Below are positions 43-54,410 of a stretch of DNA of 64,000 nucleotides, one piece after another. Within the stretch, counting starts at the first letter, position 1, and the number at the start of each line of letters is the position of its first letter. The notes below the pieces were generated by a model. That model did no database searches. It was given only the letters and a program-made list of their open reading frames with translations, and was not told the DNA's origin. The position numbers and the translations under genes were made by a program. Location: the IMG/VR virus record IMGVR_UViG_3300013116_000108, positions 1 to 64,000 of that record. The stretch is one strand, 5' to 3'.

Positions 43-3000
43 ATGCTATCAAAGTCAATCAAAGGTATATTAATAAGTTCATTAATATTTCTGCTAACTG
101 CTTGTGGAGGCGGTGGAGGTGGCGGTTCTATAACTTTAAATACTCCAACAAATCCAGATACCCCAATAGACACATCTTTTGGTAATACTGCTACAAGTAG
201 TATTAATGCTATTAATAATGGACTTCAAGTTTTAAATAATTCAACCGGCATGGAACTTAGTGCCATAAGACAAATTAAAGATAAAGATAATCTTAAAACT
301 GTTTTGGATAGTTTTAAAGCAATCGGTACTCTTAAATCCACATGGGACGGATTTGATGCTGAAACTAAAACTGCCTTAAACAGTTTGTTTACTGTTACAT
401 TTACATTTAAAGAAGGCGGTGCTAGTAAAACAGTTAACATGGGTACAGCAATTAATATTGCCCATGGAATGTATACAAGGTATTATGAAGGTCATGAAAC
501 ATTTTGGAATGATGCTGTTAATACAGGTCAGTTTGACGATACTGATTCTAGTTATACTTCTATTAAAAATAATGTTGAAACAGATTGGAACAAGAGTTCA
601 GAAGATTTATTAGATGAGTTTGATAACGGTTCTACAAAAAATGTTGTAGTAAATACAACCGAAACTGTTAGAGTAATAGTTGAAACAAATGCTACAAGAA
701 CATCATCAACAGAAGCAACTGAAACAGAAACAGTAGGTACTGTAACAAATACCTATAAGGTTACAACTACTGTAACAACAACATACAGTTCATACAGAGA
801 CGACACAGTTAACTATACAAGAACTGATGTTGTAACTACTTACACAAATGGTAAAGTTGAAACTACTACAGGTACGACTACCGAAGCAAGTAGAACTCAA
901 GGTACTGTTGTGGAACACGATGTAACTACAAGCGAATCGGTTAGTAGAGAATTAATAGAAACAGTAGATTCAGCAGAAATTAATATTAACACATTTGGAA
1001 ATAATATTATTCAACAAGTAAAAATTGTTGACAATGCTTTATCTATATTAAAGCAAACTGGCAATATGGTTAGTGCTATGGTTAGTATAGAACAAAGCGA
1101 CTATGTATCTGCTTTAGCAGGGTTTAAAGAAATAGCAACACTAAAGGAGACATTTGACGGATTATCAAATGCTGACAAACTTACACTACAAAGTATGACA
1201 GTGACTATTACATACGGAAATGGTTCATCCGAAACTACAAATCTAGTTGATGCTATCGCTATCGCTGATGGTATGTATAATAGATATTATAAAGGACATG
1301 AAACATTCTGGGAGAATGGTGCTACTAATGGACAAGTGGATGATTCAAGTTCTGACTTTACTAGTTTATCAGAAAAAGTAACTGCTGATGCTAGTAAGTC
1401 TAAAGATGATTTGATTGCTACTTATAATGGAACATACGAAGAACCAGAAGAAGAAACTGTAACTCTAGTTTCAACAACAAGTAATGTAGTAAACACTCAA
1501 GAAACTGTTAGGGTAATTATATCAACAAATGCTACAGAAATTATTACATCACAATCAACTAGTACAGAAGTAACAGGCACTATTACTAAAACTTACAGAG
1601 ACACATATGAAGTAACAAGGACATATAGTTCTTATAGAGATGATACTGTAAGTTATACTAGAACTGATATAGTAAAAACATATAGCGACGGTACAACTAC
1701 AACTACTACTGGTACAACTAGTGAGGTTGCTAGAACACAAGGTAATATAGTAGAGCATGGAGTAACTGATAGTGAACCCGTTCGTGTTAATAGAGAATTA
1801 ATATCAACCGTAGATTCAGCAGAAACAGGTACAGTCAACGAAGCACACTTAGGTACTAAGACTACAGGATTGTCAGATGATGCTGACAGTTTCTTAACAG
1901 GAGAAACAAGAGGTTACTGTGGCAACTGGCAAGGATGTACAGTAGACAACTTAACAGTTTGGACTGAAACAGACATTGCTAATGGCACAGGTACAAGTTA
2001 TCAACACATAGACGCCTCAGGTATTAATGATGCTTGGGCAAAAGGTTGGACAGGTAAAGGAGTTAACATAGGTATTATTGATACAGGTGTTAACATTGAC
2101 CACGATGAATTAGATGGACAAATAGGTGGCGTATATAATAACAGTTCAACAGACTGGAATGGACACGGCTCACACGTTGCTGGTACTATTGTTGCTAAAC
2201 ATGATGGACAAGGTACAGTAGGTGTAGCATTTGATTCTAAATTGTTTGTTGTTAGAACTCCTAGTTTAAGTTATTTAGATCACAACTATTGGAATTATTT
2301 TAAAGAAAATGATGTTGACGTAGTTAATTTAAGTATTAACGGTCGTTGGGATCAGAATGTTAGTTTCGATGATAGTTATGTTGTTGGTAGTGATCCTAAT
2401 AATCAAAACAACACTTATCAATCACTATCACTCATTGATGCTGATAAGAACTTATACAAATGGAATAAGACTATATTCAAAAATGGCGGGTATGTAAACT
2501 TAGATCAAGTTATAGCACAAGATGATAACGGCAATCTTGTTTATGGAGGTATGGATTCAATTAATGCTTTAGCAAGTAATATGGCTAACAGTGATATTAT
2601 ACTTGTTAATAGTGCTGGTAATAATCAAAAGATAGCAATGGCTCCAGGTTGGTATGCTACTGCTACAAACGACGATGGTAGTTTAATGCTAGACGGAAGA
2701 TTAATTATTGTTGGATCTTATGATCCTGCTAGTGGAACGAATAATAGTCATTCTGCTAATGCTGGAAGTATTTGTTGGGACGTAGTAAACGATGTATGTC
2801 AAGATGAATATCATGTTAGTGACTTCTTTATTAGAGCACCAGAGAGTATGACATCATTAGACAACTCCGGTTCTAAATATGTAAACATGAATGGTACTAG
2901 TATGGCGGCTCCAGTAGTAACTGGTAGTATTGCTTTACTTAGACAAATGTGGCCACACATGACCGGTTCTAATACAGTACAACTAATTTTACAAACTGCT

Positions 3001-3909
3001 GATTCAAGTTATGATGGATACAATGTAGGACTTGATGGACACGGTAGATTAGATATGGATGCCGCGACACAGCCAATTGGTGCTGTTGGTATTCCAACAG
3101 ATGGTAGAACAGATGGTGCCACTACTAGTACAACTGGCTACACAGCAGGCGGTAATAGTTTACCTAGTTCACTAAGTTCATTGATAGTAGAAACTACAGA
3201 AATGGGATTTAACAGAGATTGGTTAATACCACTTGCTAATGCTCATGTACCAATAGACACAGCATTTCATTCATTTACAAACTATGCTGGTTTAACAGGA
3301 TATGGTAATAGCGACTTTGCTGTACACTTAAAAGAAAATAGTACAGATAGTATTGCTGTAACACTAGATGGAACTACATTTGGTTACATGAAAGAGGATG
3401 GACAATACTTAGGAAGATACTTTAATGGTATGTTTGATATTGGTGAAACACAAACTGCTTTCTTACAAACAGGTAGAGTTTGGGAAACATCAGCAACTAA
3501 CAGACTATCTGCTAATATAAATTTAGGTTATACAACTGTTGACACAGTTAATGGATCACTTATTAATAGTAGTGACGACTTAATGAGTTATGGTTGGAAA
3601 CTACAAAATGATACAGTACTTAACGATAAGTGGAGTATGTCAAGTTATATTAGTCAACCAGTTAATGTATTTTCAGGTAACATGAATATACATGCTCCGA
3701 CTAGTAGAGGTGGAAATGAACTAAGTTCTAACCAAGTAAGTTATACAGATACAGAATGGAGCCAAACTGCTAAAACTGAAACTGATATCGGAATAGGATT
3801 TAACTATACCGAAGGAGACTTTAGTTGGAGCATAAGCACAGTATCAAGGTTTGATACTGCTGTTGGCAATGATCACAATGTTACCGCTTCATTTAAGTGG
3901 GTATTTTAG
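43..3909 (+). CDS. Lipoprotein S8 (subtilisin-like) serine protease with N-terminal tandem repeats and C-terminal autotransporter-like beta-barrel
   Basis: Lipobox LLTAC then a poly-Gly linker; catalytic triad motifs GIIDTG, HGSHVAGT, GTSMAAP; C-terminus of alternating beta strands ending in Phe (VTASFKWVF). Confidence 0.85.
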   Translation: MLSKSIKGILISSLIFLLTACGGGGGGGSITLNTPTNPDTPIDTSFGNTATSSINAINNGLQVLNNSTGMELSAIRQIKDKDNLKTVLDSFKAIGTLKSTWDGFDAETKTALNSLFTVTFTFKEGGASKTVNMGTAINIAHGMYTRYYEGHETFWNDAVNTGQFDDTDSSYTSIKNNVETDWNKSSEDLLDEFDNGSTKNVVVNTTETVRVIVETNATRTSSTEATETETVGTVTNTYKVTTTVTTTYSSYRDDTVNYTRTDVVTTYTNGKVETTTGTTTEASRTQGTVVEHDVTTSESVSRELIETVDSAEININTFGNNIIQQVKIVDNALSILKQTGNMVSAMVSIEQSDYVSALAGFKEIATLKETFDGLSNADKLTLQSMTVTITYGNGSSETTNLVDAIAIADGMYNRYYKGHETFWENGATNGQVDDSSSDFTSLSEKVTADASKSKDDLIATYNGTYEEPEEETVTLVSTTSNVVNTQETVRVIISTNATEIITSQSTSTEVTGTITKTYRDTYEVTRTYSSYRDDTVSYTRTDIVKTYSDGTTTTTTGTTSEVARTQGNIVEHGVTDSEPVRVNRELISTVDSAETGTVNEAHLGTKTTGLSDDADSFLTGETRGYCGNWQGCTVDNLTVWTETDIANGTGTSYQHIDASGINDAWAKGWTGKGVNIGIIDTGVNIDHDELDGQIGGVYNNSSTDWNGHGSHVAGTIVAKHDGQGTVGVAFDSKLFVVRTPSLSYLDHNYWNYFKENDVDVVNLSINGRWDQNVSFDDSYVVGSDPNNQNNTYQSLSLIDADKNLYKWNKTIFKNGGYVNLDQVIAQDDNGNLVYGGMDSINALASNMANSDIILVNSAGNNQKIAMAPGWYATATNDDGSLMLDGRLIIVGSYDPASGTNNSHSANAGSICWDVVNDVCQDEYHVSDFFIRAPESMTSLDNSGSKYVNMNGTSMAAPVVTGSIALLRQMWPHMTGSNTVQLILQTADSSYDGYNVGLDGHGRLDMDAATQPIGAVGIPTDGRTDGATTSTTGYTAGGNSLPSSLSSLIVETTEMGFNRDWLIPLANAHVPIDTAFHSFTNYAGLTGYGNSDFAVHLKENSTDSIAVTLDGTTFGYMKEDGQYLGRYFNGMFDIGETQTAFLQTGRVWETSATNRLSANINLGYTTVDTVNGSLINSSDDLMSYGWKLQNDTVLNDKWSMSSYISQPVNVFSGNMNIHAPTSRGGNELSSNQVSYTDTEWSQTAKTETDIGIGFNYTEGDFSWSISTVSRFDTAVGNDHNVTASFKWVF
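175..1824 (+). repeat. Two diverged tandem copies (~270-280 aa each) inside the S8 protein
   Basis: Both copies contain GMY.RYY.GHETFW, VVNT.ETVRVI..TNAT, TYSSYRDDTV.YTRTD and end in REL..TVDSAE; approx 175-978 and 991-1824. Confidence 0.9.
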
Positions 3910-6175: not shown

Positions 6176-6763
6176 ATGGCATTAATACCAATTGTAGTAG
6201 AACAAACATCAAAAGGCGAACGTAGTTACGACATTTATAGTAGACTATTAAAAGACCGTATTGTAATGTTAAGCGGTGTAGTTGAAGAAAATATGTCAAA
6301 TGCCATTGTTGCTCAATTACTATTTTTAGAAAGTCAAGATCCTGAAAAAGATATTACACTATATATTAACTCACCTGGTGGTTCAGTAACTGCTGGAATG
6401 AGTATGCTTGATACAATGAACTTTATTAAACCTGATATCTCAACTGTAGTTATGGGCCAGGCTTGTTCGATGGGTTCATTGTTAGCAAGTTCAGGTACTA
6501 AAGGTAAACGTTTTATGTTACCTAATGCTAGACACATGATACATCAACCCTTAGGTGGATTTAGTGGACAAGCAACTGACGTAGAAATTAGAGCAAACGA
6601 GTTGTTACGTTGGAAGAAAGTATTAACTGAAGTGTATGTTACTAACACAGGCAAAGACTTTGATACATTAAGTAAAGACATGGATCGTGATAACTTTATG
6701 ACAAGTGAAGAAGCGGTTGCTTACGGACTTGCTGATAAAATTATTGCCGAAAGAGAAAAGTAA
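6176..6763 (+). CDS. clpP: ATP-dependent Clp protease proteolytic subunit
   Basis: [33 protein letters not shown], catalytic Ser in QACSMG, His in MIHQP, Asp in RDNFM. Confidence 0.97.
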
Positions 6764-13176: not shown

Positions 13177-14475
13177 TTGATGTCAAATATTAATCCTACC
13201 GCAAAAGAAGATATCAAACCTGGCTGTGAAGTTGGGTTTGAAACTGACCCTAAGTTAGATCTTAAGGTACGTGAGCAACTAGTTCAAGCAAGAATTGGTT
13301 TGCTTATACTTCATCCTTTTTATGGTAACCTTGCTTTAAGACTTAAACTTGTTAATGCTGATGCTTGGTGTCCAACTGCCGCAACTGATGGCAGACACTT
13401 TTTTTACAATACTAAGTTTATTGAAAAACTAACAGACGGTGAAATACTATTTTTAATGGGACATGAAATACTTCATGTAGTTTACGACCATATGGCTAGG
13501 AACCAAGGACGTAACCCACAGTTATCAAATATTGCCGCTGACTATTGTGTTAATGGTGACTTGGTACAAAACAAAGTTGGTACTCCTATTAAAGTAGTTC
13601 CTATTTTACACGAAACAAAATATTACGGTTGGTCATTTGAAAAAGTATATGACGACCTTTATGAGAATGCTGAAAAAATTGACATGGACGACTTGCTTGA
13701 AAAAATGTTAGATGAACATTTAGATGGTGATAGCGGAGATGGTGATTCAAACGGTAATCAAGAAACTGACGAAAACGGTAACCCTGTTAGTAAGAGCAAA
13801 CCTAAACTATCTGAAAAAGATCGTAGACAAATTAAAGATGAAATGAAAGAGGCAGTATTAAATGCGGCCGCGGCGGCTGGTAATAGTGCTGGTAACATTC
13901 CACAAGGTGTTAAAAGACTTATTGAACAATGGACCGCTCCTAAATTAGATTGGAGAGAAATACTTCAACAACAGATACAATCGACTATTAAGAACGACTT
14001 TACTTTCCAAAAGATTAACAGACGTTCTTGGCACATGGATGCCATTCTTCCGGGAATGGACAATGATGAAAAAATTGATATTTGTCTTTGTGTTGACATG
14101 TCAGGATCTGTTTCAAGTACAATGATAAAAGATTTCTTTAGTGAAGTTAAAGGTATTACTGATATGTACGAAGACTTTAACATTCAACTATGGTGCTTTG
14201 ATACTGAAGTATATGGATATAAGAAATTTGATCCAACTAACATTGATGAATTGTTAGACTATACTCCGTTAGGTGGAGGTGGTACAGAATTTGATGTTAA
14301 CTGGACATTTATGAAAGAACATGACATTGTACCTAAGAAATTAATTATGTTCACAGACGGTTACCCGTGGGGTAGTTGGGGTGACGAAAACTACTGTGAT
14401 ACAGTTTTTATTATTCACGGTGCTAAAGATGTTACTGCTCCGTTTGGTGTTACTTGTCATTACGAGGAGGCTTAA
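13177..14475 (+). CDS. Metallopeptidase-like plus vWA domain protein (DUF2201-type AAA partner)
   Basis: TAATDG, HEILH zinc motif, MIDAS-like CVDMSGS, GGGGTEF, FTDG. Confidence 0.85.
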   Translation: MMSNINPTAKEDIKPGCEVGFETDPKLDLKVREQLVQARIGLLILHPFYGNLALRLKLVNADAWCPTAATDGRHFFYNTKFIEKLTDGEILFLMGHEILHVVYDHMARNQGRNPQLSNIAADYCVNGDLVQNKVGTPIKVVPILHETKYYGWSFEKVYDDLYENAEKIDMDDLLEKMLDEHLDGDSGDGDSNGNQETDENGNPVSKSKPKLSEKDRRQIKDEMKEAVLNAAAAAGNSAGNIPQGVKRLIEQWTAPKLDWREILQQQIQSTIKNDFTFQKINRRSWHMDAILPGMDNDEKIDICLCVDMSGSVSSTMIKDFFSEVKGITDMYEDFNIQLWCFDTEVYGYKKFDPTNIDELLDYTPLGGGGTEFDVNWTFMKEHDIVPKKLIMFTDGYPWGSWGDENYCDTVFIIHGAKDVTAPFGVTCHYEEA

Positions 14476-21894: not shown

Positions 21895-22677
21895 CTATTC
21901 ATAGTCGATTGAAATAACGTGTTCAAATGTTTTATTAATTAGCGGTTTATAAAATAAGTTTTTATGAATAGTAAATCCTGTACTACCAGAATCGCTACTA
22001 AACTTTGCTAATTGTTTAAAGAACATCGTTCTCCTTTTAGTTTTACTTGCTCCAATTAGTTTATCTTCTTCGATATGTAACCAATTGTTTTCGTAGTTTT
22101 GTCTATCAACCGGATTCCATGTTCTGTGGTTCATAAACAAATTTTGTTTACCATTAATATTTATTGTTAACGGTAAGTCGGCCATCCTACTCTGGCTTGT
22201 TTGATTTTTATAGTCTACTAGACTTGTAATAAATTTACCTTTAGTAACCTTTGCTACTTGGCTTATAAACTCTTTTTGCTCGTCTTCAGAGTTAAAGTAT
22301 GTCATAGTTTGATCTAAACCTAATACTAAATCGTATGTGTTTCCTTCTTTAATTTCATTCTCTAACGTGTGATTAACCATGCCTTCCATAGTGTCTTTAT
22401 AACCATTAACACCTTCGAAAGTTGAAGAAAGAAAATCATGCTGTCCTATAGGACAATATATTGCTCTTACAGTATGTCCTCTAGCCGCTAATCCTGTAGC
22501 AACTAGGCTACAACCTAAACTCAAAACATTATAAGTTTTAGGATGTGTTCCTTTAGCAAAGCCAAGTGCCGTATCGATAATGCCCGTTTTAACGTCTGCG
22601 ATTTCTATTGTTTTCTTGGGGTTTGAAGCGATTACGGTCCTAATAGCGTCGTAGTATTCTGATTGATGATCATTCAT
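21895..22677 (-). CDS. SAM-dependent methyltransferase-like protein
   Basis: NVLSLGC motif I-like, YDLVLGL motif; degenerate. Confidence 0.45.
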   Translation of the reverse strand: MNDHQSEYYDAIRTVIASNPKKTIEIADVKTGIIDTALGFAKGTHPKTYNVLSLGCSLVATGLAARGHTVRAIYCPIGQHDFLSSTFEGVNGYKDTMEGMVNHTLENEIKEGNTYDLVLGLDQTMTYFNSEDEQKEFISQVAKVTKGKFITSLVDYKNQTSQSRMADLPLTININGKQNLFMNHRTWNPVDRQNYENNWLHIEEDKLIGASKTKRRTMFFKQLAKFSSDSGSTGFTIHKNLFYKPLINKTFEHVISIDYE

Positions 22678-22737
22678 ATTTTTATCGATTCCTATTCGGT
22701 TACTGTATTTACCATTTAGAATGAGAATGTCAATGAG

Positions 22738-22813
22738 TGGTGGAGGATACCAGGATCGAACTGGTGACCTCCTGAATGCAAATCAGGCGCTCTCCCATCT
22801 GAGCTAATCCCCC
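22738..22813 (-). tRNA. tRNA-Ala(UGC), CCA encoded
   Basis: 76 nt cloverleaf; acceptor GGGGGAT/ATCCTCC with G3:U70; anticodon arm CCTGA-TTTGCAT-TCAGG; GTTCGAT T-loop. Confidence 0.97.
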
Positions 22814-23190
22814 TATTTTGTATGTGAGTCTAATTCAACTAAACTAGTTTCTCTATCGATAAACTTGTATTCAACTTTTACTGGATCAAATTCTTTCATT
22901 AGATCAAAAATTAATTGAGGATCAAAGTCGGAACAAGAATAAACATCCAATTGAACTAGCCCTGGATTAGATTCATCCCAACAATGTAAAGCAATGTGAG
23001 ATGTTTCAATTATTACCAAACCAGTTAAGCCAGCATTACCAGGAACATCAACGTATGCTGTAATTGGACCTTGGCATATTTTCATGTCTAATTTTTTTAC
23101 TAGATCTGTTAGCCAAGCATGACACCAACTAGGATCGTCTGGAGTTTTTCTAGTTTCTGCCCTTACAATTAGATGTTTATGCTTCGTCAT
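22813..23190 (-). CDS. speD: Pyruvoyl-dependent S-adenosylmethionine decarboxylase-like proenzyme
   Basis: HKHLIV, GLTGLVIIETSHIALHCW, LDVYSC; substrate could be SAM, Arg or Orn. Confidence 0.85.
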   Translation of the reverse strand: MTKHKHLIVRAETRKTPDDPSWCHAWLTDLVKKLDMKICQGPITAYVDVPGNAGLTGLVIIETSHIALHCWDESNPGLVQLDVYSCSDFDPQLIFDLMKEFDPVKVEYKFIDRETSLVELDSHTK

Positions 23191-23402
23191 TTAAAGTACT
23201 TATTTAAAACTTCAATTCTATCATTTTGTGTTGCTATAATATCTAACTCTTTTTGTATTGTTTCCAATATATCTGAGTGTTCACCAATCCCTACTGTCTT
23301 GGCTAGGTACACATCAATATTAGTTTTATGTAATGCTATTTCACCATGAGCGTGGTCAATCAAACCACCAATGATGCGTTCTCTCATTTCCTGTTCAGAC
23401 AT
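23187..23402 (-). CDS. Small conserved-type phage protein
   Basis: Start MSEQEM after AAAGGA; VGIGEHSDI motif. Confidence 0.7.
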   Translation of the reverse strand: MSEQEMRERIIGGLIDHAHGEIALHKTNIDVYLAKTVGIGEHSDILETIQKELDIIATQNDRIEVLNKYFK

Positions 23403-23423
23403 GTTTTTTCCTTTCTTAATATC

Positions 23424-23499
23424 TGGTGCCGGCACACGGACTCGAACCGCGGACCTACTGATTACAAATCAGTTGCTCTACCAACTGAGCTATGCCGGC
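23424..23499 (-). tRNA. tRNA-Thr(UGU), CCA encoded
   Basis: 76 nt; acceptor GCCGGCA/TGCCGGC; anticodon arm ACTGA-TTTGTAA-TCAGT; GTTCGAG T-loop. Confidence 0.97.
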
Positions 23500-23522: not shown

Positions 23523-24707
23523 TTAAACACCGTAATCTTCTTGTCCGCCTTCACGTTCAATATCTAGTGTAACACAATGCCATCCTGCGTCCCAGAAGTG
23601 CCTGTGTCTGTTTGGTACATGGATCATGTCAATACCATGTGAGTTGAATGTTTTTTCTAATTCTAAATTCTCAGCATTTACTACTGCTGTTTTTTCGTCT
23701 AGCATTAACAGATTAACATCAAAAACTGTTTCTTCTACAAACCCAACCCAATCGTCTAACCAGGTTTCTACAAAGTCTGTAAACTCAGCATTATCTTCTT
23801 CACCAGGCATCCACCATTTACCTTCGTTATGCTTTTTAATATCTAAAAACGGTCTTACTTGATTTAAGTTGCTTTCTGGTAAGAATATTTTATCCCAACC
23901 TGGGAAAGATTCAGCGTAATGTCCAATATCTTGTGTTGTTAATAATACGCCCGGTTTTAGCACATTAAAAACAGCATCATTATGACCACCAATAAAAACA
24001 CCTTTATAGTTGAACTGCGGATATGCCAATTCCATGTAGTCAGCAATATCTACTGCCTGTTGAGTATCAGCAAAACAAGTCTTTCCTACTCTAGTTAATT
24101 CCGGAGCACAAAACCCTGTCATTCTATCTGTTGTATGTTGCTCTTGTTCTAATTCTAATAATGTGTCAATATCGCTATCTTTAATACCTAACCGACCTAA
24201 TCTATTTCTGTGATTTGCTGTTGTTCTTGTAAACTTCTTTTTATTTTTAACAATGCTCCAATCAAAGTTATCACCAAACCATTTCTCAAGCAATGGAACC
24301 CATGGTTTGGATTCAAAAGCACTTCCAGTCATTACTACTTGATTGCCCATTGTAACAAAATCATCACGCGGATTAAGTGGTGGGACAGGTAGTTGATTTC
24401 TGCCCTTTTCATGTTGACCATGTTTATCACTTCCCATGCCCAACTTACCTTCTTCATCCAAATAGTCCATTATACTTGTTTTGTATCCAAGTTCTTCTGT
24501 TGTAGTAGTATATGTTTTAGCACCGAAGTCTTCTACTACCTTTTTTAAGTTATCTAAATCTTCTAATGTTTCACTAGCAATACGCTGAAGACAATCTCTT
24601 GCTTTAGAGTTTTTAACGTCTTCAAAAAATTCTGGAGGATAAGTTGTACCAATTACTAATTGTTTGAGCGGTTGGAATTCGCTCCATGAGTTTACTTTAT
24701 TTGTCAT
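23523..24707 (-). CDS. Amidinotransferase (pentein; glycine/inosamine-phosphate amidinotransferase-like) copy 1
   Basis: VNSWSEFQPLKQLVIG, PRDD, GGHND, FDVN, AGWHCVTLD. Confidence 0.85.
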   Translation of the reverse strand: MTNKVNSWSEFQPLKQLVIGTTYPPEFFEDVKNSKARDCLQRIASETLEDLDNLKKVVEDFGAKTYTTTTEELGYKTSIMDYLDEEGKLGMGSDKHGQHEKGRNQLPVPPLNPRDDFVTMGNQVVMTGSAFESKPWVPLLEKWFGDNFDWSIVKNKKKFTRTTANHRNRLGRLGIKDSDIDTLLELEQEQHTTDRMTGFCAPELTRVGKTCFADTQQAVDIADYMELAYPQFNYKGVFIGGHNDAVFNVLKPGVLLTTQDIGHYAESFPGWDKIFLPESNLNQVRPFLDIKKHNEGKWWMPGEEDNAEFTDFVETWLDDWVGFVEETVFDVNLLMLDEKTAVVNAENLELEKTFNSHGIDMIHVPNRHRHFWDAGWHCVTLDIEREGGQEDYGV

Positions 24708-28872: not shown

Positions 28873-29022
28873 ATGAGTAAAGACGACCAACGTGCTTGGA
28901 ATATGTTTAAAATATCAAACGGTGGACAATTATGGACCAGTTGTGATTTATGTAAAACGTTTTGTCTTGGCTTAATTGCTGGACTTTGTATAACTTTTAT
29001 ACTTGTTGCTATTATTTTGTAG
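28873..29022 (+). CDS. 49-aa Cys-containing membrane peptide
   Basis: AAGGGA RBS; CDLC and C-terminal TM helix. Confidence 0.5.
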   Translation: MSKDDQRAWNMFKISNGGQLWTSCDLCKTFCLGLIAGLCITFILVAIIL

Positions 29023-31111
29023 TAGCAACATACACACCATCCCATTCTTTAGGTGGAGGATTTTTCTTAAATTCTTCAATCCTATCTGTGATGATTTCGT
29101 AATAACTATCTAGAGAACCACTAAACTGCCCCTTAAGATTATCAATACAATCTTTACAATGTTTCCAATCTTGTTTACGATAACTTTTTCTCAATTCTAT
29201 ATGTAGTTTAACAAATTGCATTACAGTTGGTAAGTCATGTATTCCAACAACATCAGGATCTAATACTGTGTAAATAGCAACCGGTTCTGTTTTGCCTTTT
29301 ACAGCAATTTGATCTAGTTCTAAAATTGTATGTTTATCAGATAAACTCCTTGCTGTTTCTTCGCCAAATAATATTTTCACACCATATCCTTTCGTTTGTC
29401 CTTCTAACCTAGCGGCTAAATTAACAGCATCACCTAAACAACTGTAATCAAATCTTTGATCTGATCCCATATTTCCAACTACGGCATCACCTGTATTAAG
29501 TCCAATGCCTATGTTAATTGGTAGTTTATTTTCTGCCGTTAACTGAGTATTTAACTCCTCTAATCCCTTTAACATCAATAAACTGGTATCAACTGCCTTG
29601 TCAGCCTGTTCGTCAACATCTAAAGGAGCGTTCCAAAATGCCATAATACAATCGCCCATGTATTTGTCGACCGTACCTTCTTTTTCCATAATAATATTTG
29701 TCATAGGTGTTAAGAACCTGTTAACTAATTCTGTTAAACCTTGTGGATTAGTTTTGAATTGTTCTGATATAGGAGTGAACCCTCTAATATCGCAAAACAG
29801 CAATGTAAGTTTTCTAGTATCTCCACCTAGTTTTAATAAGTCTGGATCTTTTTGTAATTTCTTAACCATGCTCGGTGCTAGGTAATGTTCAAACTGCTTT
29901 TTGATTTGTTGCTTTAATCTAAACTCTTTTACAAATCTATTAAACACAGCATGGAAGCCAACAATTAATAACATTAATGCCGGCATTGTAGGATCTATTA
30001 ACCATAACTTAGATTGGAACAAATATGTCACGCCATATACTATGCCATTTAAACTAGCAATAATAACAACACCACTAAACCAATAAGGAGCAAAGGCTAC
30101 AATAATAACAAGTAACATGCCCATAGCAATAATGCCACCTAGTTCATATAAATCCGCCCACATAGGACGTTCAACAGTTTCGCCTAATATAATTGTGCTT
30201 AGTGTACTGCCTATAATTTCATGTGGATATTTTTCACCTATAGGTGTACCAACTGGATTGCCTAATCCTTCTGCTGTTAATCCTATAATAACTGTTTTAC
30301 CTTCAATACTTTGTAAACTATCTACAGTATAATCTAATGTAGGAATGTCAGCATTCCAACGTAAAAATAATCTACCCCTGTCATCAGTTTTAATAATTCC
30401 TCTGTTAACAGGAAAACCTTTTACTCTAACACTATCTATTCCATAAGGCGTAGTTTTCATTTGATAACTGTCTACGCCCATCATTACTCTTAGTGTTTCT
30501 ACTGCTATATTAGGATATAAATCTCCTTGTACATTTATAAGCAAAGGAACACGTCTTACAACGCCATCTACCTCTGGTGCTGTAGTTATTACACCTACAC
30601 CATCAACAACGTCTGCTAGTTCTTTTAGAGGCCCTAGCATACCTGAATATGTAAACAAGTTATTAGCCGCATCTTTGTTACCGCCAACCATACTAACACC
30701 ACGTGGTATACCTGTTGTGCTTTTTTGTATGCTACCTGTTTGTGCTATAACTACACCATTCTGGTATAGTGTTTCCATAAATTCCTGATCTTTGAGAAAT
30801 CTATCTGCTTCACTAAACAGTACAGGTAATACAATAACGCCTGCTCCGTTTTCGCGAAGTTCCCAAATAAGATTGGAAATTAAATCTCTTGGCCAAGGCC
30901 ATTGGCCATTTGTTTCGATACTTGCTTCCCCCAATGTTACATAAACAAGATTATTATCTACATAAGGTTCTTCTTTTTGTAATTGATAATCAAAACTTTT
31001 TAATTTTGCTGTTTGTACTACCCAAGGATTTAAGAATACTATATAAGCAATAGCAAATACAGTTAAAAAAGGTATACTCCAATGTGTTAGAATTCTACTT
31101 AACTTCGACAT
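29012..31111 (-). CDS. CHASE2-domain class III adenylate cyclase
   Basis: N-terminal TM, CHASE2 (GQWPWPR, DGVVRRVPLL), 3 TM helices, FCDIRGFT, DKYMGD (ATP-specifying Lys), FDYSCLGDAVNLAARLE. Confidence 0.92.
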   Translation of the reverse strand: MSKLSRILTHWSIPFLTVFAIAYIVFLNPWVVQTAKLKSFDYQLQKEEPYVDNNLVYVTLGEASIETNGQWPWPRDLISNLIWELRENGAGVIVLPVLFSEADRFLKDQEFMETLYQNGVVIAQTGSIQKSTTGIPRGVSMVGGNKDAANNLFTYSGMLGPLKELADVVDGVGVITTAPEVDGVVRRVPLLINVQGDLYPNIAVETLRVMMGVDSYQMKTTPYGIDSVRVKGFPVNRGIIKTDDRGRLFLRWNADIPTLDYTVDSLQSIEGKTVIIGLTAEGLGNPVGTPIGEKYPHEIIGSTLSTIILGETVERPMWADLYELGGIIAMGMLLVIIVAFAPYWFSGVVIIASLNGIVYGVTYLFQSKLWLIDPTMPALMLLIVGFHAVFNRFVKEFRLKQQIKKQFEHYLAPSMVKKLQKDPDLLKLGGDTRKLTLLFCDIRGFTPISEQFKTNPQGLTELVNRFLTPMTNIIMEKEGTVDKYMGDCIMAFWNAPLDVDEQADKAVDTSLLMLKGLEELNTQLTAENKLPINIGIGLNTGDAVVGNMGSDQRFDYSCLGDAVNLAARLEGQTKGYGVKILFGEETARSLSDKHTILELDQIAVKGKTEPVAIYTVLDPDVVGIHDLPTVMQFVKLHIELRKSYRKQDWKHCKDCIDNLKGQFSGSLDSYYEIITDRIEEFKKNPPPKEWDGVYVATTK

Positions 31112-43200: not shown

Positions 43201-44363
43201 TAAGCCTCCTGTACGTCTGTGTCATTAATAATTACTTCCTTTCCTTTAAGTTGATCTAACTCGTAATAGTATTCAAGCAAAGTATTTTCTAATATACCTT
43301 TTAATGCTCTAGCACCTACCTTATATTGTAACGCAAGTTCGACTATTTTGTCAAGTGCTTTCTCCGAAAATATCAAACTAACATTATCTAAATCAAAATA
43401 GAACCTAGTTTGCTCAATTAGGTTATTATCAATATCAGCCAATACTTGTTTTAATTCATCTTTGGAAAGTTCTGTTGTTTGAACAACAACTGGAAAGCGA
43501 CCAATAAATTCAGGTATCATTCCAAAGTCAATTAACTCGCTTGAAATTAGTTTACTTTGGCCTCCGTGTGTTTCTCCAAACCCAATAGTATTTGTTTTTT
43601 GGCTGTCCATTCCAACAAATGCTCCACTTCCAATAAACAAAATCTTACTAGTATCTACTTCAATCATTTCTTGCTGTGGATGTTTTCTTCCACCTTGTGG
43701 TGCTACTCTAACAGTTGTACCTTCAACTAATTTTAACAATGCTTGTTGTACACCTTCGCCTGAAACATCTCTAGTAATTGAAACGTTCTCACTTTTCCTG
43801 CCAATTTTATCAATTTCATCTAAAAATACAATACCTTGTTCTGCTCTTGCTACATTGTAATCTACTTTCATTAGCAAAGAACTAATAATACTTTCAACAT
43901 CATCACCAACATACCCACTTTCAGTTAAACTTGTAGCATCAGCAATTACAATAGGCACATCTAAAAACTTAGCAATTTGTTTTGCCATAAAAGTTTTACC
44001 ACTACCAGTAGGACCAATTATTAATTGATTATTCTTTTCAATAGTACCTTTTCTATCATACATTAATCTCTTGTAGTGATTTACTACACCTACTGCCATA
44101 TGACGTTTTGCTTTATGTTGTCCAACTACTGTTTCGTCTAAAAATGCTACAATCTCTTTTGCTGTTTTGGGTTCTAATTCCTTTGCCCATTGCTTTGCCT
44201 TTTCATCTGTGAGGACTTTACTACACAAATCTATACATTCATCACAAATACCAACACCTTCTGCTACAATAATCTTGTATACTTGGTCTTTTGTTTTGCC
44301 ACAAAAATTACACTGACTGACTGAACGAATTTGATCTATACTAGTTGATTTATCATCTGTCAT
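43200..44363 (-). CDS. clpX: ATP-dependent Clp protease ATP-binding subunit ClpX
   Basis: Zinc finger CNFCGK..CDEC, GPTGSGKT, GYVG pore loop, DEIDK, RDVSGEGVQQALLK, RKH loop, IGF loop; start 44363 or 44393. Confidence 0.96.
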   Translation of the reverse strand: MTDDKSTSIDQIRSVSQCNFCGKTKDQVYKIIVAEGVGICDECIDLCSKVLTDEKAKQWAKELEPKTAKEIVAFLDETVVGQHKAKRHMAVGVVNHYKRLMYDRKGTIEKNNQLIIGPTGSGKTFMAKQIAKFLDVPIVIADATSLTESGYVGDDVESIISSLLMKVDYNVARAEQGIVFLDEIDKIGRKSENVSITRDVSGEGVQQALLKLVEGTTVRVAPQGGRKHPQQEMIEVDTSKILFIGSGAFVGMDSQKTNTIGFGETHGGQSKLISSELIDFGMIPEFIGRFPVVVQTTELSKDELKQVLADIDNNLIEQTRFYFDLDNVSLIFSEKALDKIVELALQYKVGARALKGILENTLLEYYYELDQLKGKEVIINDTDVQEA

Positions 44364-44730
44364 TTGAGAGCCTTTTTTGTAATATCCAGTCAACTGGAAC
44401 TGTTAGTTTTCTATTATTTAATGAATCGTAATTCTCTTCATGATGTATATCATCACACCACCAAACGTTTGGCATAGACATCAAGTACCCTGTAACAATT
44501 TTATTTTCATATTCATTGCTTACAATAACTACAGATGATCTAGTTGCTGTATTAACAATCCAATCAACTTTGCTATTTTGTTCGCCTATGTGTAAACTAT
44601 AATCGCCGTATTTAGGTAATTCCTTAATATATTGCTCAACTGTCCAGTTATCACAACCTACAAGGAATACACTTTCTTGTTTACCAAACCAATAATCTGG
44701 TTCTGTTACTACTGTTACATTATTGTCCAA
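44353..44730 (-). CDS. Hypothetical protein
   Basis: Operon-packed. Confidence 0.6.
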   Translation of the reverse strand: MDNNVTVVTEPDYWFGKQESVFLVGCDNWTVEQYIKELPKYGDYSLHIGEQNSKVDWIVNTATRSSVVIVSNEYENKIVTGYLMSMPNVWWCDDIHHEENYDSLNNRKLTVPVDWILQKRLSNDR

Positions 44731-53983: not shown

Positions 53984-54037
53984 ATTTTTTTCCTTTACAT
54001 ATATGTAAAGACCCTCGCCACTAGAGGCGAGAGCCCT

Positions 54038-54341
54038 CTTCTAGAAGATTTCTGTTGATAGGCATCTTCCAAACCCCGAGCAACTATGCCGCTAAGGCAA
54101 AGTCCTCATGAAACACATTATCGTTTGCGTTTATACGTTTTGTTCGCGTTAACCGAGCTTACATCCGGGCAACTCCACTCTCCTAATAACTACCTGTCGA
54201 TCCTTTTTCAACCCCATCATAAACACATTCATATAATCACACCAAAATCTGTGTTGTTACTTTTGGAATGTGTTTATGGTGGAGTTGCTGGGTACCGCCC
54301 CCAGGTCCAGATTAGCGTTTGAATAACTTCATCGTTACGAC
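54038..54341 (-). ncRNA. ssrA: Circularly permuted two-piece tmRNA; acceptor piece ends CCA at 54277, coding piece starts at 54215; tag ANDNVFHEDFALAA (54128-54084)
   Basis: ...GGCGGTACCCAGCAACTCCACCA precedes GGGGTTGAAAAAGGATCGAC; acceptor GGGGTTG/CAACTCC with G3:U70; 13-bp inverted repeat bounding the intervening segment; outer ends approximate. Confidence 0.93.
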
Positions 54342-54345
54342 ATTA

Positions 54346-54374
54346 TTTATAACATAAAGTAGAAAAAATGTCAA
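54346..54374 (-). promoter_or_regulatory. Composite sigma70 and late promoter for tmRNA
   Basis: TTGACA-N17-TATAAA whose -10 extends to TATAAATA. Confidence 0.8.
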
Positions 54375-54410
54375 GAAAGTGATTTGAAAAAACGAAGGAA
54401 AACATAGGTT

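What the first reader, a model, noticed from the sequence alone, without database searches (positions are those of the whole stretch)
22738..23190. speD stop codon shares its last base with G1 of tRNA-Ala, so tRNA maturation would create a non-stop mRNA
Seen: the minus strand reads CAT ACA AAA TAG GGGGATTAGCTC; the G of TAG (22813) is G1 of the 76-nt tRNA. Known: RNase P cuts immediately 5' of G1. Inferred: processing leaves speD mRNA ending ...AAA UA with no stop, a tmRNA substrate. The product would be tagged and degraded by ClpXP, all encoded by this phage, which would be a built-in timer coupling tRNA release to shut-off of the decarboxylase.
Basis: partly seen in the sequence, partly recalled or inferred. 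Interest (0 to 1): 0.6.

Follow-up and report, generated by a model that had tools for sequence, protein, structure and literature searches.

The report
Phage gene's stop codon overlaps tRNA
In this large marine phage the last base of a decarboxylase gene's stop codon is also the first base of a tRNA-Ala gene; this is real, but it looks like an ordinary end state of genome compaction that recurs in related phages, not a purpose-built protein-degradation timer.

Summary
The SpeD-family ORF (22813..23190, minus strand) ends in TAG at 22815-22813. ARAGORN and Rfam both start tRNA-Ala(UGC) at 22813. The phage also encodes an alpha-type two-piece tmRNA, ClpP and ClpX.

Relatives keep the order tRNA-Thr / speD / tRNA-Ala, but the junction varies: spacers of 84, 49, 16 or 8 nt, or the 1-nt overlap. 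Two relatives whose SpeD is 95% identical have an intact TAA and an 8-nt spacer.

Overlaps arose at least four times in the speD tree:
- twice as TA|G with tRNA-Ala;
- once as T|AG with tRNA-Ile;
- once as T|AG with tRNA-Trp.

About 150 unrelated ORF-to-tRNA junctions in marine phage contigs show the same classes: -10, -7, -1, 0 and +1. These are the registers where a stop can be spelled with the tRNA's own 5' bases.

The best reading is spacer collapse in a co-transcribed operon. RNase P cleavage would leave a non-stop mRNA. However, E. coli secG mRNA is destroyed within 30 s of RNase P cleavage even though it keeps its stop codon, so the missing G adds little.

No RNA data covered the junction.

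The parts
22813..23190 (-). SpeD-family pyruvoyl decarboxylase gene (125 aa). Stop TAG is at 22815-22813. The start ATG overlaps the upstream ORF's TGA (ATGA).
   Evidence: Nearest isolate homologues are Pelagibacter phage proteins at 44-54% identity. The substrate (AdoMet or arginine) is not determinable here (PMC9992855).
22738..22813 (-). tRNA-Ala(UGC), 76 nt, CCA encoded, G3:U70. G1 (22813) is the G of the speD stop codon.
   Evidence: ARAGORN; Rfam RF00005, 64.8 bits, 5' end at 22813; acceptor pairing read.
22813..22815 (-). The shared junction. TA (22815-22814) would stay on the mRNA and G (22813) on the tRNA after RNase P cleavage.
   Evidence: The identical junction is in L091, L094, L095 and L158.
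23187..23402 (-). 71-aa ORF of family phrog_1811, lying between tRNA-Thr and speD.
   Evidence: In L175 and L201 its homologue directly abuts the same tRNA-Ala, at +1 and -10.
23424..23499 (-). tRNA-Thr(UGU). It lies 23 nt after the stop of the 394-aa ORF and 21 nt before the 71-aa ORF start.
23523..24707 (-). 394-aa amidinotransferase-like ORF at the head of the local gene block.
   Evidence: 89-92% identical in the syntenic relatives L086-L088.
21895..22677 (-). 260-aa ORF, 60 nt downstream of tRNA-Ala. A conserved TAAATA motif lies at 22706-22711 in the spacer.
53993..54378 (-). Phage two-piece (alpha-type) tmRNA with tag ANDNVFHEDFALAA.
6212..6751 (+). ClpP homologue.
   Evidence: 266.8 bits.
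43203..44393 (-). ClpX homologue (zinc finger plus AAA_2).

Best explanation
The overlap is the collapsed end state of an intergenic spacer in a compact phage operon that has tRNA genes embedded between protein genes.

Arrangement (shown): the amidinotransferase-like gene, tRNA-Thr, the phrog_1811 ORF, speD and tRNA-Ala lie head to tail on the minus strand. The gaps are 23, 21, -4 and -1 nt.

Inferred: one primary transcript carries them all.

How the overlap arises (read from the sequences): the tRNA tolerates any 5' leader, and the SpeD C-terminal tail is variable. Deletions can therefore shorten the spacer until the stop codon must be spelled with the tRNA's own 5' bases. This explains the discrete overlap classes seen across phages:
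- TA|G1 gives -1.
- T|A1G2 gives -2.
- A TGA at tRNA positions 5-7 gives -7.
- U8-A9-G10 = TAG gives -10.

Functional consequence (inferred): ribosomes terminate normally at UAG only on unprocessed transcripts. A terminating ribosome covers the acceptor-stem 5' strand, so termination and tRNA folding exclude each other. Once RNase P cuts, the speD message ends in ...AAA-UA-3'OH with no stop. It is then degraded 3'-to-5', and any ribosome on it is rescued by tmRNA.

Upstream-mRNA inactivation is a general property of mRNA-tRNA co-transcripts. It does not depend on the shared G. The overlap is tolerated rather than designed.
For: - Junction anatomy.
- No promoter-like or terminator-like site on the minus strand between 24767 and 22456, other than one inside tRNA-Thr itself.
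- Syntenic relatives have spacers of +84 (L086/L088), +49 (L162), +16 (L087) and +8 (L092/L093/L155), or -1 (L091/L094/L095/L158).
- The alignment shows that the L086 and L162 spacers are homologous. Shorter states are deletions, and the SpeD tails differ.
- The speD tree needs at least 4 independent changes to the overlap state, involving three tRNA identities.
- Background: non-speD ORF-to-tRNA gaps include -10 (10 cases), -7 (2), -1 (6), 0 (7) and +1 (5), with many at 4-10.
- One ORF family shows 0, -1 and -10 next to the same tRNA-Ala (L164/L168, L191, L183/L207/L261).
- phrog_1811 shows +1 and -10.
- TAG is an ordinary stop in this genome: TAA 107, TAG 31, TGA 23.
- Precedent: RNase P separates leuU from secG, leaving 14 nt after the stop, and secG mRNA then has a half-life under 30 s, against 17 min when RNase P is inactivated (PMC2241853).
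Against: - Among speD lineages the overlap is frequent: about 4 of 11 lineages, or 8 of 16 distinct junctions. That compares with 6 of about 150 for other ORFs at -1/-2. This could indicate selection specific to speD-tRNA pairs. The counts are small and not fully corrected for relatedness.
- The base before G1 is T in 51 of 71 junctions of this tRNA-Ala family. The overlap forces A there, which is a less favoured RNase P context, so the state may carry a small cost that something offsets.
- Co-transcription and RNase P cleavage are inferred, not observed. The one metatranscriptome contig from a near-identical phage (98.7% identity) covers 22842-23464 and stops 29 nt short of the junction.
Confidence: 0.6

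Rival explanations
1. The overlap is a selected timer: RNase P release of tRNA-Ala makes speD mRNA non-stop, SpeD is tagged by the phage tmRNA and destroyed by phage ClpXP, and this shuts off the decarboxylase.
For: The overlap is real. The phage encodes tmRNA, ClpP and ClpX. The tag ends in LAA. Overlaps recur in speD lineages. In L006/L115 a tmRNA lies about 280 nt upstream of speD.
Against: The register is not conserved even among 95%-identical SpeD genes, where it is +8 with an intact TAA. The same overlap classes occur for unrelated genes. RNase P cleavage alone already inactivates an upstream mRNA that keeps its stop (PMC2241853). Tagging removes only newly made chains, not existing enzyme. 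No SmpB was found in the 204 kb held. There is no expression data.
Confidence: 0.07
2. Selected coupling without a timer. Tight abutment lets ribosome traffic at the speD stop control tRNA-Ala folding and maturation. Alternatively, it lets the unprocessed tRNA act as a 3' structure that protects speD mRNA. Either way, expression of the two genes is balanced.
For: At least four independent origins of -1/-2 lie downstream of speD, with three different tRNAs. The junction persists across 7-9% SpeD divergence and different flanks (L091 versus L094). From established ribosome footprint sizes, a terminating ribosome must cover tRNA positions 1 to about 12.
Against: Near relatives do without it, at +8, +16, +49 and +84. 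The pile-up at the boundary is also what simple spacer loss predicts. Unrelated ORFs behave alike.
Confidence: 0.15
3. The tRNA is transcribed from its own promoter inside the 3' part of speD. Most speD mRNA and most tRNA then come from different transcripts, and processing has little effect on speD.
For: In L086/L088 the 84-nt spacer carries TATAAT 5 nt before G1 and an ATAAATA motif. This suggests that the ancestral tRNA may have had a promoter. Phage-specific promoters would escape the sigma-70 scan.
Against: No promoter-like site was found in the window upstream of the tRNA. That spacer is deleted here. Any speD transcript still has to run into the tRNA, because there is no terminator before it, and so it would still be an RNase P substrate.
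Confidence: 0.08
4. Mitochondrion-like completion. After RNase P cleavage the UA (or U in the -2 cases) is extended by non-templated A residues to UAA, which restores a stop.
For: Both overlap types leave exactly U or UA, as in animal mitochondrial mRNAs. E. coli adds A-tails to RNase P-released secG fragments (PMC2241853).
Against: The likely host is an alphaproteobacterium, judging from the alpha-type tmRNA. As far as I know from the literature (not tested here), that group lacks PAP I. Bacterial tails promote decay. That only U or UA is left follows trivially from tRNAs beginning with G or AG.
Confidence: 0.03
5. Artefact: an assembly error, a wrong tRNA boundary, or a spurious ORF.
For: None found.
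Against: Two programs agree on the 5' end. The acceptor pairing requires G1 = 22813. The ORF is a conserved Pfam family member. The junction is present in five assemblies.
Confidence: 0.02

Closest known systems
E. coli secG-leuU (and similar) mRNA-tRNA co-transcripts separated by RNase P (Mohanty and Kushner 2008, PMC2241853)
   Same: A protein gene is followed on the same strand by a tRNA with no promoter between. A single RNase P cut makes the tRNA 5' end and the mRNA 3' end. The upstream mRNA then becomes unstable.
   Different: secG keeps its stop codon and 14 nt of spacer. Here the cut would remove the last base of the stop. Processing is shown there by experiment and is only inferred here.
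tRNA punctuation with incomplete stop codons in animal mitochondria
   Same: tRNAs are embedded between coding regions of a polycistronic transcript. After tRNA excision the mRNA ends in U or UA.
   Different: In mitochondria the DNA lacks a full stop and polyadenylation completes it. Here the DNA spells a full TAG that is usable before processing. No evidence of A-addition exists, and the register is variable among relatives.
Short overlaps between adjacent genes in compact phage genomes (ATGA, TAATG)
   Same: An overlap of 1-4 nt arises when spacers are lost. The same operon has an ATGA overlap at 23187-23190.
   Different: The downstream partner is an RNA gene whose maturation physically cuts the transcript inside the stop codon.
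Phage-encoded two-piece tmRNAs of marine phages (Buchholz et al. 2022, PMC9004378)
   Same: This phage carries an alpha-type permuted tmRNA like the pelagimyophage and Melnitz group. Its role in infection is unknown.
   Different: No link between phage tmRNA and tRNA-embedded operons has been proposed there or shown here.

Membership tests
Canonical bacterial-type tRNA-Ala | Cloverleaf recognised by tRNA models, with the 5' end at G1 | tested here: met
   ARAGORN 22738..22813; Rfam RF00005, 64.8 bits, model positions 1-71, 5' end at 22813.
Canonical bacterial-type tRNA-Ala | G3:U70 identity pair and a 7-bp acceptor stem | tested here: met
   GGGGGAT pairs with ATCCTCC, read. It is conserved in all relatives.
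SpeD / AdoMet_dc pyruvoyl-dependent decarboxylases | Match to PF02675 above the gathering score | tested here: met
   56.3 bits against a cut-off of 25, E 4.5e-15.
SpeD / AdoMet_dc pyruvoyl-dependent decarboxylases | AdoMet as substrate (true SpeD, rather than an arginine or ornithine decarboxylase) | not testable with these tools
   The nearest isolate homologues are pelagiphage proteins. One of them, from HTVC201P, is an arginine decarboxylase (PMC9992855).
mRNA-tRNA co-transcripts cut by RNase P (secG-leuU type) | Same-strand adjacency with no promoter or terminator between the CDS and the tRNA | tested here: met
   The gap is -1 nt. The scan finds no such site, although phage-specific promoters are not covered.
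mRNA-tRNA co-transcripts cut by RNase P (secG-leuU type) | A transcript spanning the junction, and RNase P-dependent ends | tested here: inconclusive
   A metatranscriptome contig covers 22842-23464 (tRNA-Thr 3' part through speD) but stops 29 nt before the junction. Contigs cannot show RNA ends.
Mitochondrial-type incomplete stop codons | Stop completed by post-transcriptional A-addition | not testable with these tools
   No read-level 3'-end data were available.
Programmed non-stop / tmRNA-tagging regulatory device | The non-stop-generating junction is conserved among close relatives | tested here: not met
   L092/L093/L155 (94-95% SpeD identity) have TAA plus 8 nt. L162 has +49, L087 +16 and L086 +84.
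Programmed non-stop / tmRNA-tagging regulatory device | Tagged product detectable | not testable with these tools
   The phage is uncultured and no proteome is available.

The most novel reading that the evidence does not exclude
In large marine phages, tRNA genes embedded in operons act as RNase P-dependent punctuation. This routinely turns upstream messages into non-stop mRNAs, through stops shared with or lying inside the tRNA at registers -1, -2, -7 and -10. The phage-borne tmRNA, here together with ClpXP, exists to clear the resulting stalled ribosomes and tagged products. tRNA maturation and shut-off of neighbouring auxiliary genes such as speD would then be mechanistically linked.
Probability: 0.1. 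Interest if true: 0.7.

Novelty: new member of a known kind. Interest (0 to 1): 0.35.

Why it matters
Annotation pipelines often treat CDS-tRNA overlaps as errors. Here the overlap is genuine, is found in several assemblies, and arose repeatedly.

It shows that phage tRNAs can be so tightly embedded in operons that their maturation must cut inside or at a stop codon. That gives a bacterial-virus counterpart to mitochondrial tRNA punctuation.

It also suggests a concrete, testable source of non-stop mRNAs during infection, which could bear on why some marine phages carry tmRNA.

As a regulatory timer for SpeD the case is weak. As a marker of obligatory mRNA-tRNA co-transcription and of how far compaction can go, it is useful but modest.

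Tried and rejected
- Isolate phage genomes (DNA search): only the tRNAs and a weak pelagiphage speD match were found, with no syntenic isolate. The protein search found only 12 Pelagibacter podophages, none with an adjacent tRNA listed. No cultured model for this junction was identified.
- Exact junction pattern in IMG/VR: no hit.
- Own genome: it has only two tRNAs and one tmRNA, so no within-genome gap statistics were possible.
None bridged 22813/22814, and tRNA depth came from many organisms. This is no evidence either way.
- Sigma-70 promoter and terminator scan: nothing between speD and the tRNA. Promoter-like sites were fewer than in shuffles, so the scan is uninformative for phage promoters.
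- TAG recoding: rejected. TAG ends 31 of 161 long ORFs, and there is no suppressor tRNA.
- PHROG annotation of the other ORFs that abut tRNAs: only phrog_1811 matched. Some short background ORFs may therefore be spurious, notably a few -10 cases that read through upstream tRNAs (L267, L268).
- Association between phage tmRNA and overlapping junctions: not attempted, because the overlap-bearing contigs are only 1.4-13 kb.

Full report
**Observation**

On the minus strand the sequence reads ...CAT ACA AAA TAG GGGG ATT AGC TC. The 125-aa ORF at 22813..23190 ends with TAG at 22815-22813. It is a member of Pfam AdoMet_dc (56 bits, E 4.5e-15).

ARAGORN places tRNA-Ala(TGC) at 22738..22813. Rfam's tRNA model independently puts the 5' end at 22813. 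The acceptor stem (GGGGGAT with ATCCTCC, including G3:U70) needs the first of the five G's, so the G of TAG is G1.

- A tmRNA with tag ANDNVFHEDFALAA. It is the alphaproteobacterial two-piece type.
- ClpP at 6212..6751.
- A ClpX with zinc finger and AAA_2 domains at 43203..44393.
- No SmpB in the 204-kb record, which CheckV rates 56% complete.

**Context**

The junction sits in a tightly packed minus-strand block:
- an amidinotransferase-like 394-aa ORF;
- a 23-nt gap;
- tRNA-Thr;
- a 21-nt gap;
- a 71-aa ORF of family phrog_1811;
- an ATGA overlap;
- speD;
- the 1-nt overlap;
- tRNA-Ala;
- a 60-nt gap;
- a 260-aa ORF.

The consensus scan finds no promoter-like or terminator-like site between the 394-aa ORF start and the tRNA-Ala end, apart from a hairpin that is tRNA-Thr itself. 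Co-transcription of speD and tRNA-Ala is therefore the natural inference, but it remains an inference.

TAG is a normal stop in this genome: TAA 107, TAG 31, TGA 23 among long ORFs.

**Relatives**

Three IMG/VR contigs share the 394-aa gene at 89-92% identity and keep tRNA-Thr, speD and tRNA-Ala in order. Their spacers are 84 nt (L086/L088) and 16 nt (L087).

A metagenome scan with SpeD gave closer relatives:
- L091 (100%) and L094, L095 and L158 (91-93%) have the identical TA|G junction.
- L092, L093 and L155 (94-95%) have a SpeD extended by ten residues, an intact TAA and an 8-nt spacer.
- L162 has a 49-nt spacer.

The alignment shows that the L086 and L162 spacers are homologous and carry a hairpin. 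The shorter states are deletions, each with a different SpeD C-terminal tail. The register is therefore polymorphic among near relatives.

**Recurrence**

The overlap is not unique to this clade:
- L098/L099 (73% identity) have TA|G with tRNA-Ala, but with a C-terminus like that of L087.
- L118/L119 have T|AG with tRNA-Ile(GAT).
- L124/L125 have T|AG with tRNA-Trp(CCA).

In the last two cases the tRNA starts with A1-G2 and pairs A1-U72. A maximum-likelihood tree of 60 distinct SpeD sequences needs at least four changes to explain the overlap state.

**Background**

I fetched 80 viral contigs that carry the same tRNA-Ala 5' pattern. I then measured, for every tRNA in all loci held, the gap to the nearest upstream same-strand ORF of at least 60 aa.

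For about 150 distinct non-speD junctions the gaps include -10 (10 cases), -7 (2), -1 (6), 0 (7) and +1 (5). There is a broad mode at 4-10 nt.

- One ORF family next to the same tRNA-Ala shows three states: TAA|G at 0 (L164, L168), TA|G at -1 (L191), and read-in to the tRNA's own U8-A9-G10 = TAG at -10 (L183, L207, L261).
- The phrog_1811 family, which in the window lies upstream of speD, abuts tRNA-Ala directly in other phages: at +1 in L175 and at -10 in L201, where it adds the residues MGD.

The overlap registers are exactly those where a stop triplet can be spelled from conserved tRNA 5' bases.

The base before G1 is T in 51 of 71 junctions of this tRNA family, and TA occurs in 7. The overlap thus forces a less usual -1 base.

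**Interpretation**

These data fit spacer collapse in compact phage genomes. The tRNA accepts any leader and the SpeD tail is variable, so deletions can proceed until the stop meets the tRNA.

If the genes are co-transcribed, RNase P leaves ...AAA-UA-3'OH, and ribosomes reaching that end would need rescue.

However, the documented bacterial precedent shows that this needs no shared base. In E. coli secG-leuU, RNase P leaves the secG stop plus 14 nt. The secG mRNA then decays with a half-life under 30 s, against 17 min for the unprocessed species in rnpA49 (PMC2241853). Unprotected 3' ends are trimmed and produce non-stop messages anyway.

Tagging would also affect only chains made after processing, so it cannot switch off enzyme already present.

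Together with the +8 junction in 95%-identical relatives, this makes a purpose-built timer unlikely (about 0.07). A weaker form of selection cannot be excluded (about 0.15). That would be coupling of translation to tRNA maturation, or use of the unprocessed tRNA as a 3' protecting structure. The grounds are that overlaps look over-represented downstream of speD, at about 4 of 11 lineages.

**RNA evidence**

One metatranscriptome (X1) holds a 624-nt contig, 98.7% identical, that covers 22842-23464. This spans the 3' part of tRNA-Thr, the 71-aa ORF and nearly all of speD. It ends 29 nt before the junction. Contigs cannot show ends or strand, and DNA carry-over is possible. The processing step therefore remains untested.

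**Identity of the enzyme**

The only isolate homologues are Pelagibacter podophage proteins at 44-54% identity. One of these, from HTVC201P, is an arginine decarboxylase rather than AdoMetDC (PMC9992855; see also PMC10407285). The name speD should therefore be read as a family label. The neighbouring amidinotransferase-like gene hints at an arginine or guanidino module.

**Verdict**

This is a real 1-nt CDS-tRNA overlap. It is a new phage example of a known kind of gene overlap and tRNA punctuation. It recurs, but its register is not conserved. The timer model is not supported. Interest is modest at 0.35.

The more general idea is that tRNA excision in phage operons generates non-stop mRNAs that phage tmRNA handles. 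This remains possible (about 0.1) and would be worth testing.

Noticed in passing
window 23523..24707 (-): The 394-aa ORF has no Pfam hit. Its last 65 residues match L-arginine:glycine amidinotransferase and HsvA structures (E 6e-11 and 3e-7). Together with the SpeD homologue, whose nearest relatives include a pelagiphage arginine decarboxylase, this may form an arginine/guanidino-metabolism module.
   Followed up: partly
window 23187..23402 (-); L175:3667-3870; L201:1878-2090: The 71-aa ORF belongs to phrog_1811 (function unknown). In other phages it sits directly before the same tRNA-Ala, at +1 nt or reading 10 nt into the tRNA. speD therefore looks like an insertion (or a loss elsewhere) between this ORF and the tRNA.
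   Followed up: partly
window 53993..54378 (-): The phage tmRNA is the permuted two-piece alphaproteobacterial type (Rfam RF01849 and RF04321), which suggests an alphaproteobacterial host. No SmpB gene lies in the 204 kb held.
   Followed up: partly
L006:2400-2720 and L006:3001-3360 (also L115): In another marine phage lineage a two-piece tmRNA gene ends about 280 nt upstream of speD. speD tends to lie in or beside tRNA/tmRNA islands, with Met, Trp, Ser, Asn, Ile or Ala tRNAs within 500 nt downstream in many loci.
   Followed up: no
L086:8317-8400 and L162:126-174: The long speD-to-tRNA-Ala spacers are homologous. In L086 the spacer holds a 7-bp hairpin (CAGAAGC / GCTTCTG), an ATAAATA motif and TATAAT 5 nt before G1. 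This may be an ancestral tRNA promoter or mRNA 3' structure that the window has lost.
   Followed up: no
window 22706..22711 (-) and 22728..22733 (-): A TAAATA motif about 30 nt upstream of the 260-aa ORF start is conserved in relatives, where it reads xTAAATA and resembles a T4-type late promoter. In the window it is preceded by a perfect TTGACA 16 nt upstream. A new transcription unit may start right after tRNA-Ala.
   Followed up: no
71 distinct junctions of the GGGGGATTAGCTCAG tRNA-Ala family (loci L163-L242 and others): The base at -1 is T in 51 of 71 junctions, in line with the known RNase P preference for U(-1). TA precedes G1 in only 7.
   Followed up: partly
window 29012..31111 (-): A 699-aa protein with a CHASE2 sensor domain and an adenylate/guanylate cyclase catalytic domain is encoded by the phage.
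   Followed up: no
window 43..3909 (+); 13177..14475 (+): There is a 1288-aa protein with a subtilase domain and a DUF2201 metallopeptidase/VWA-like protein. Together with ClpXP, this gives the window an unusually rich protease complement.
   Followed up: no
L128:1215-1589 and L134 (tRNA-Asn junction): A 125-aa ORF ends in a TGA spelled by tRNA-Asn positions 5-7, giving a 7-nt overlap. This is a further overlap register not seen with speD.
   Followed up: no
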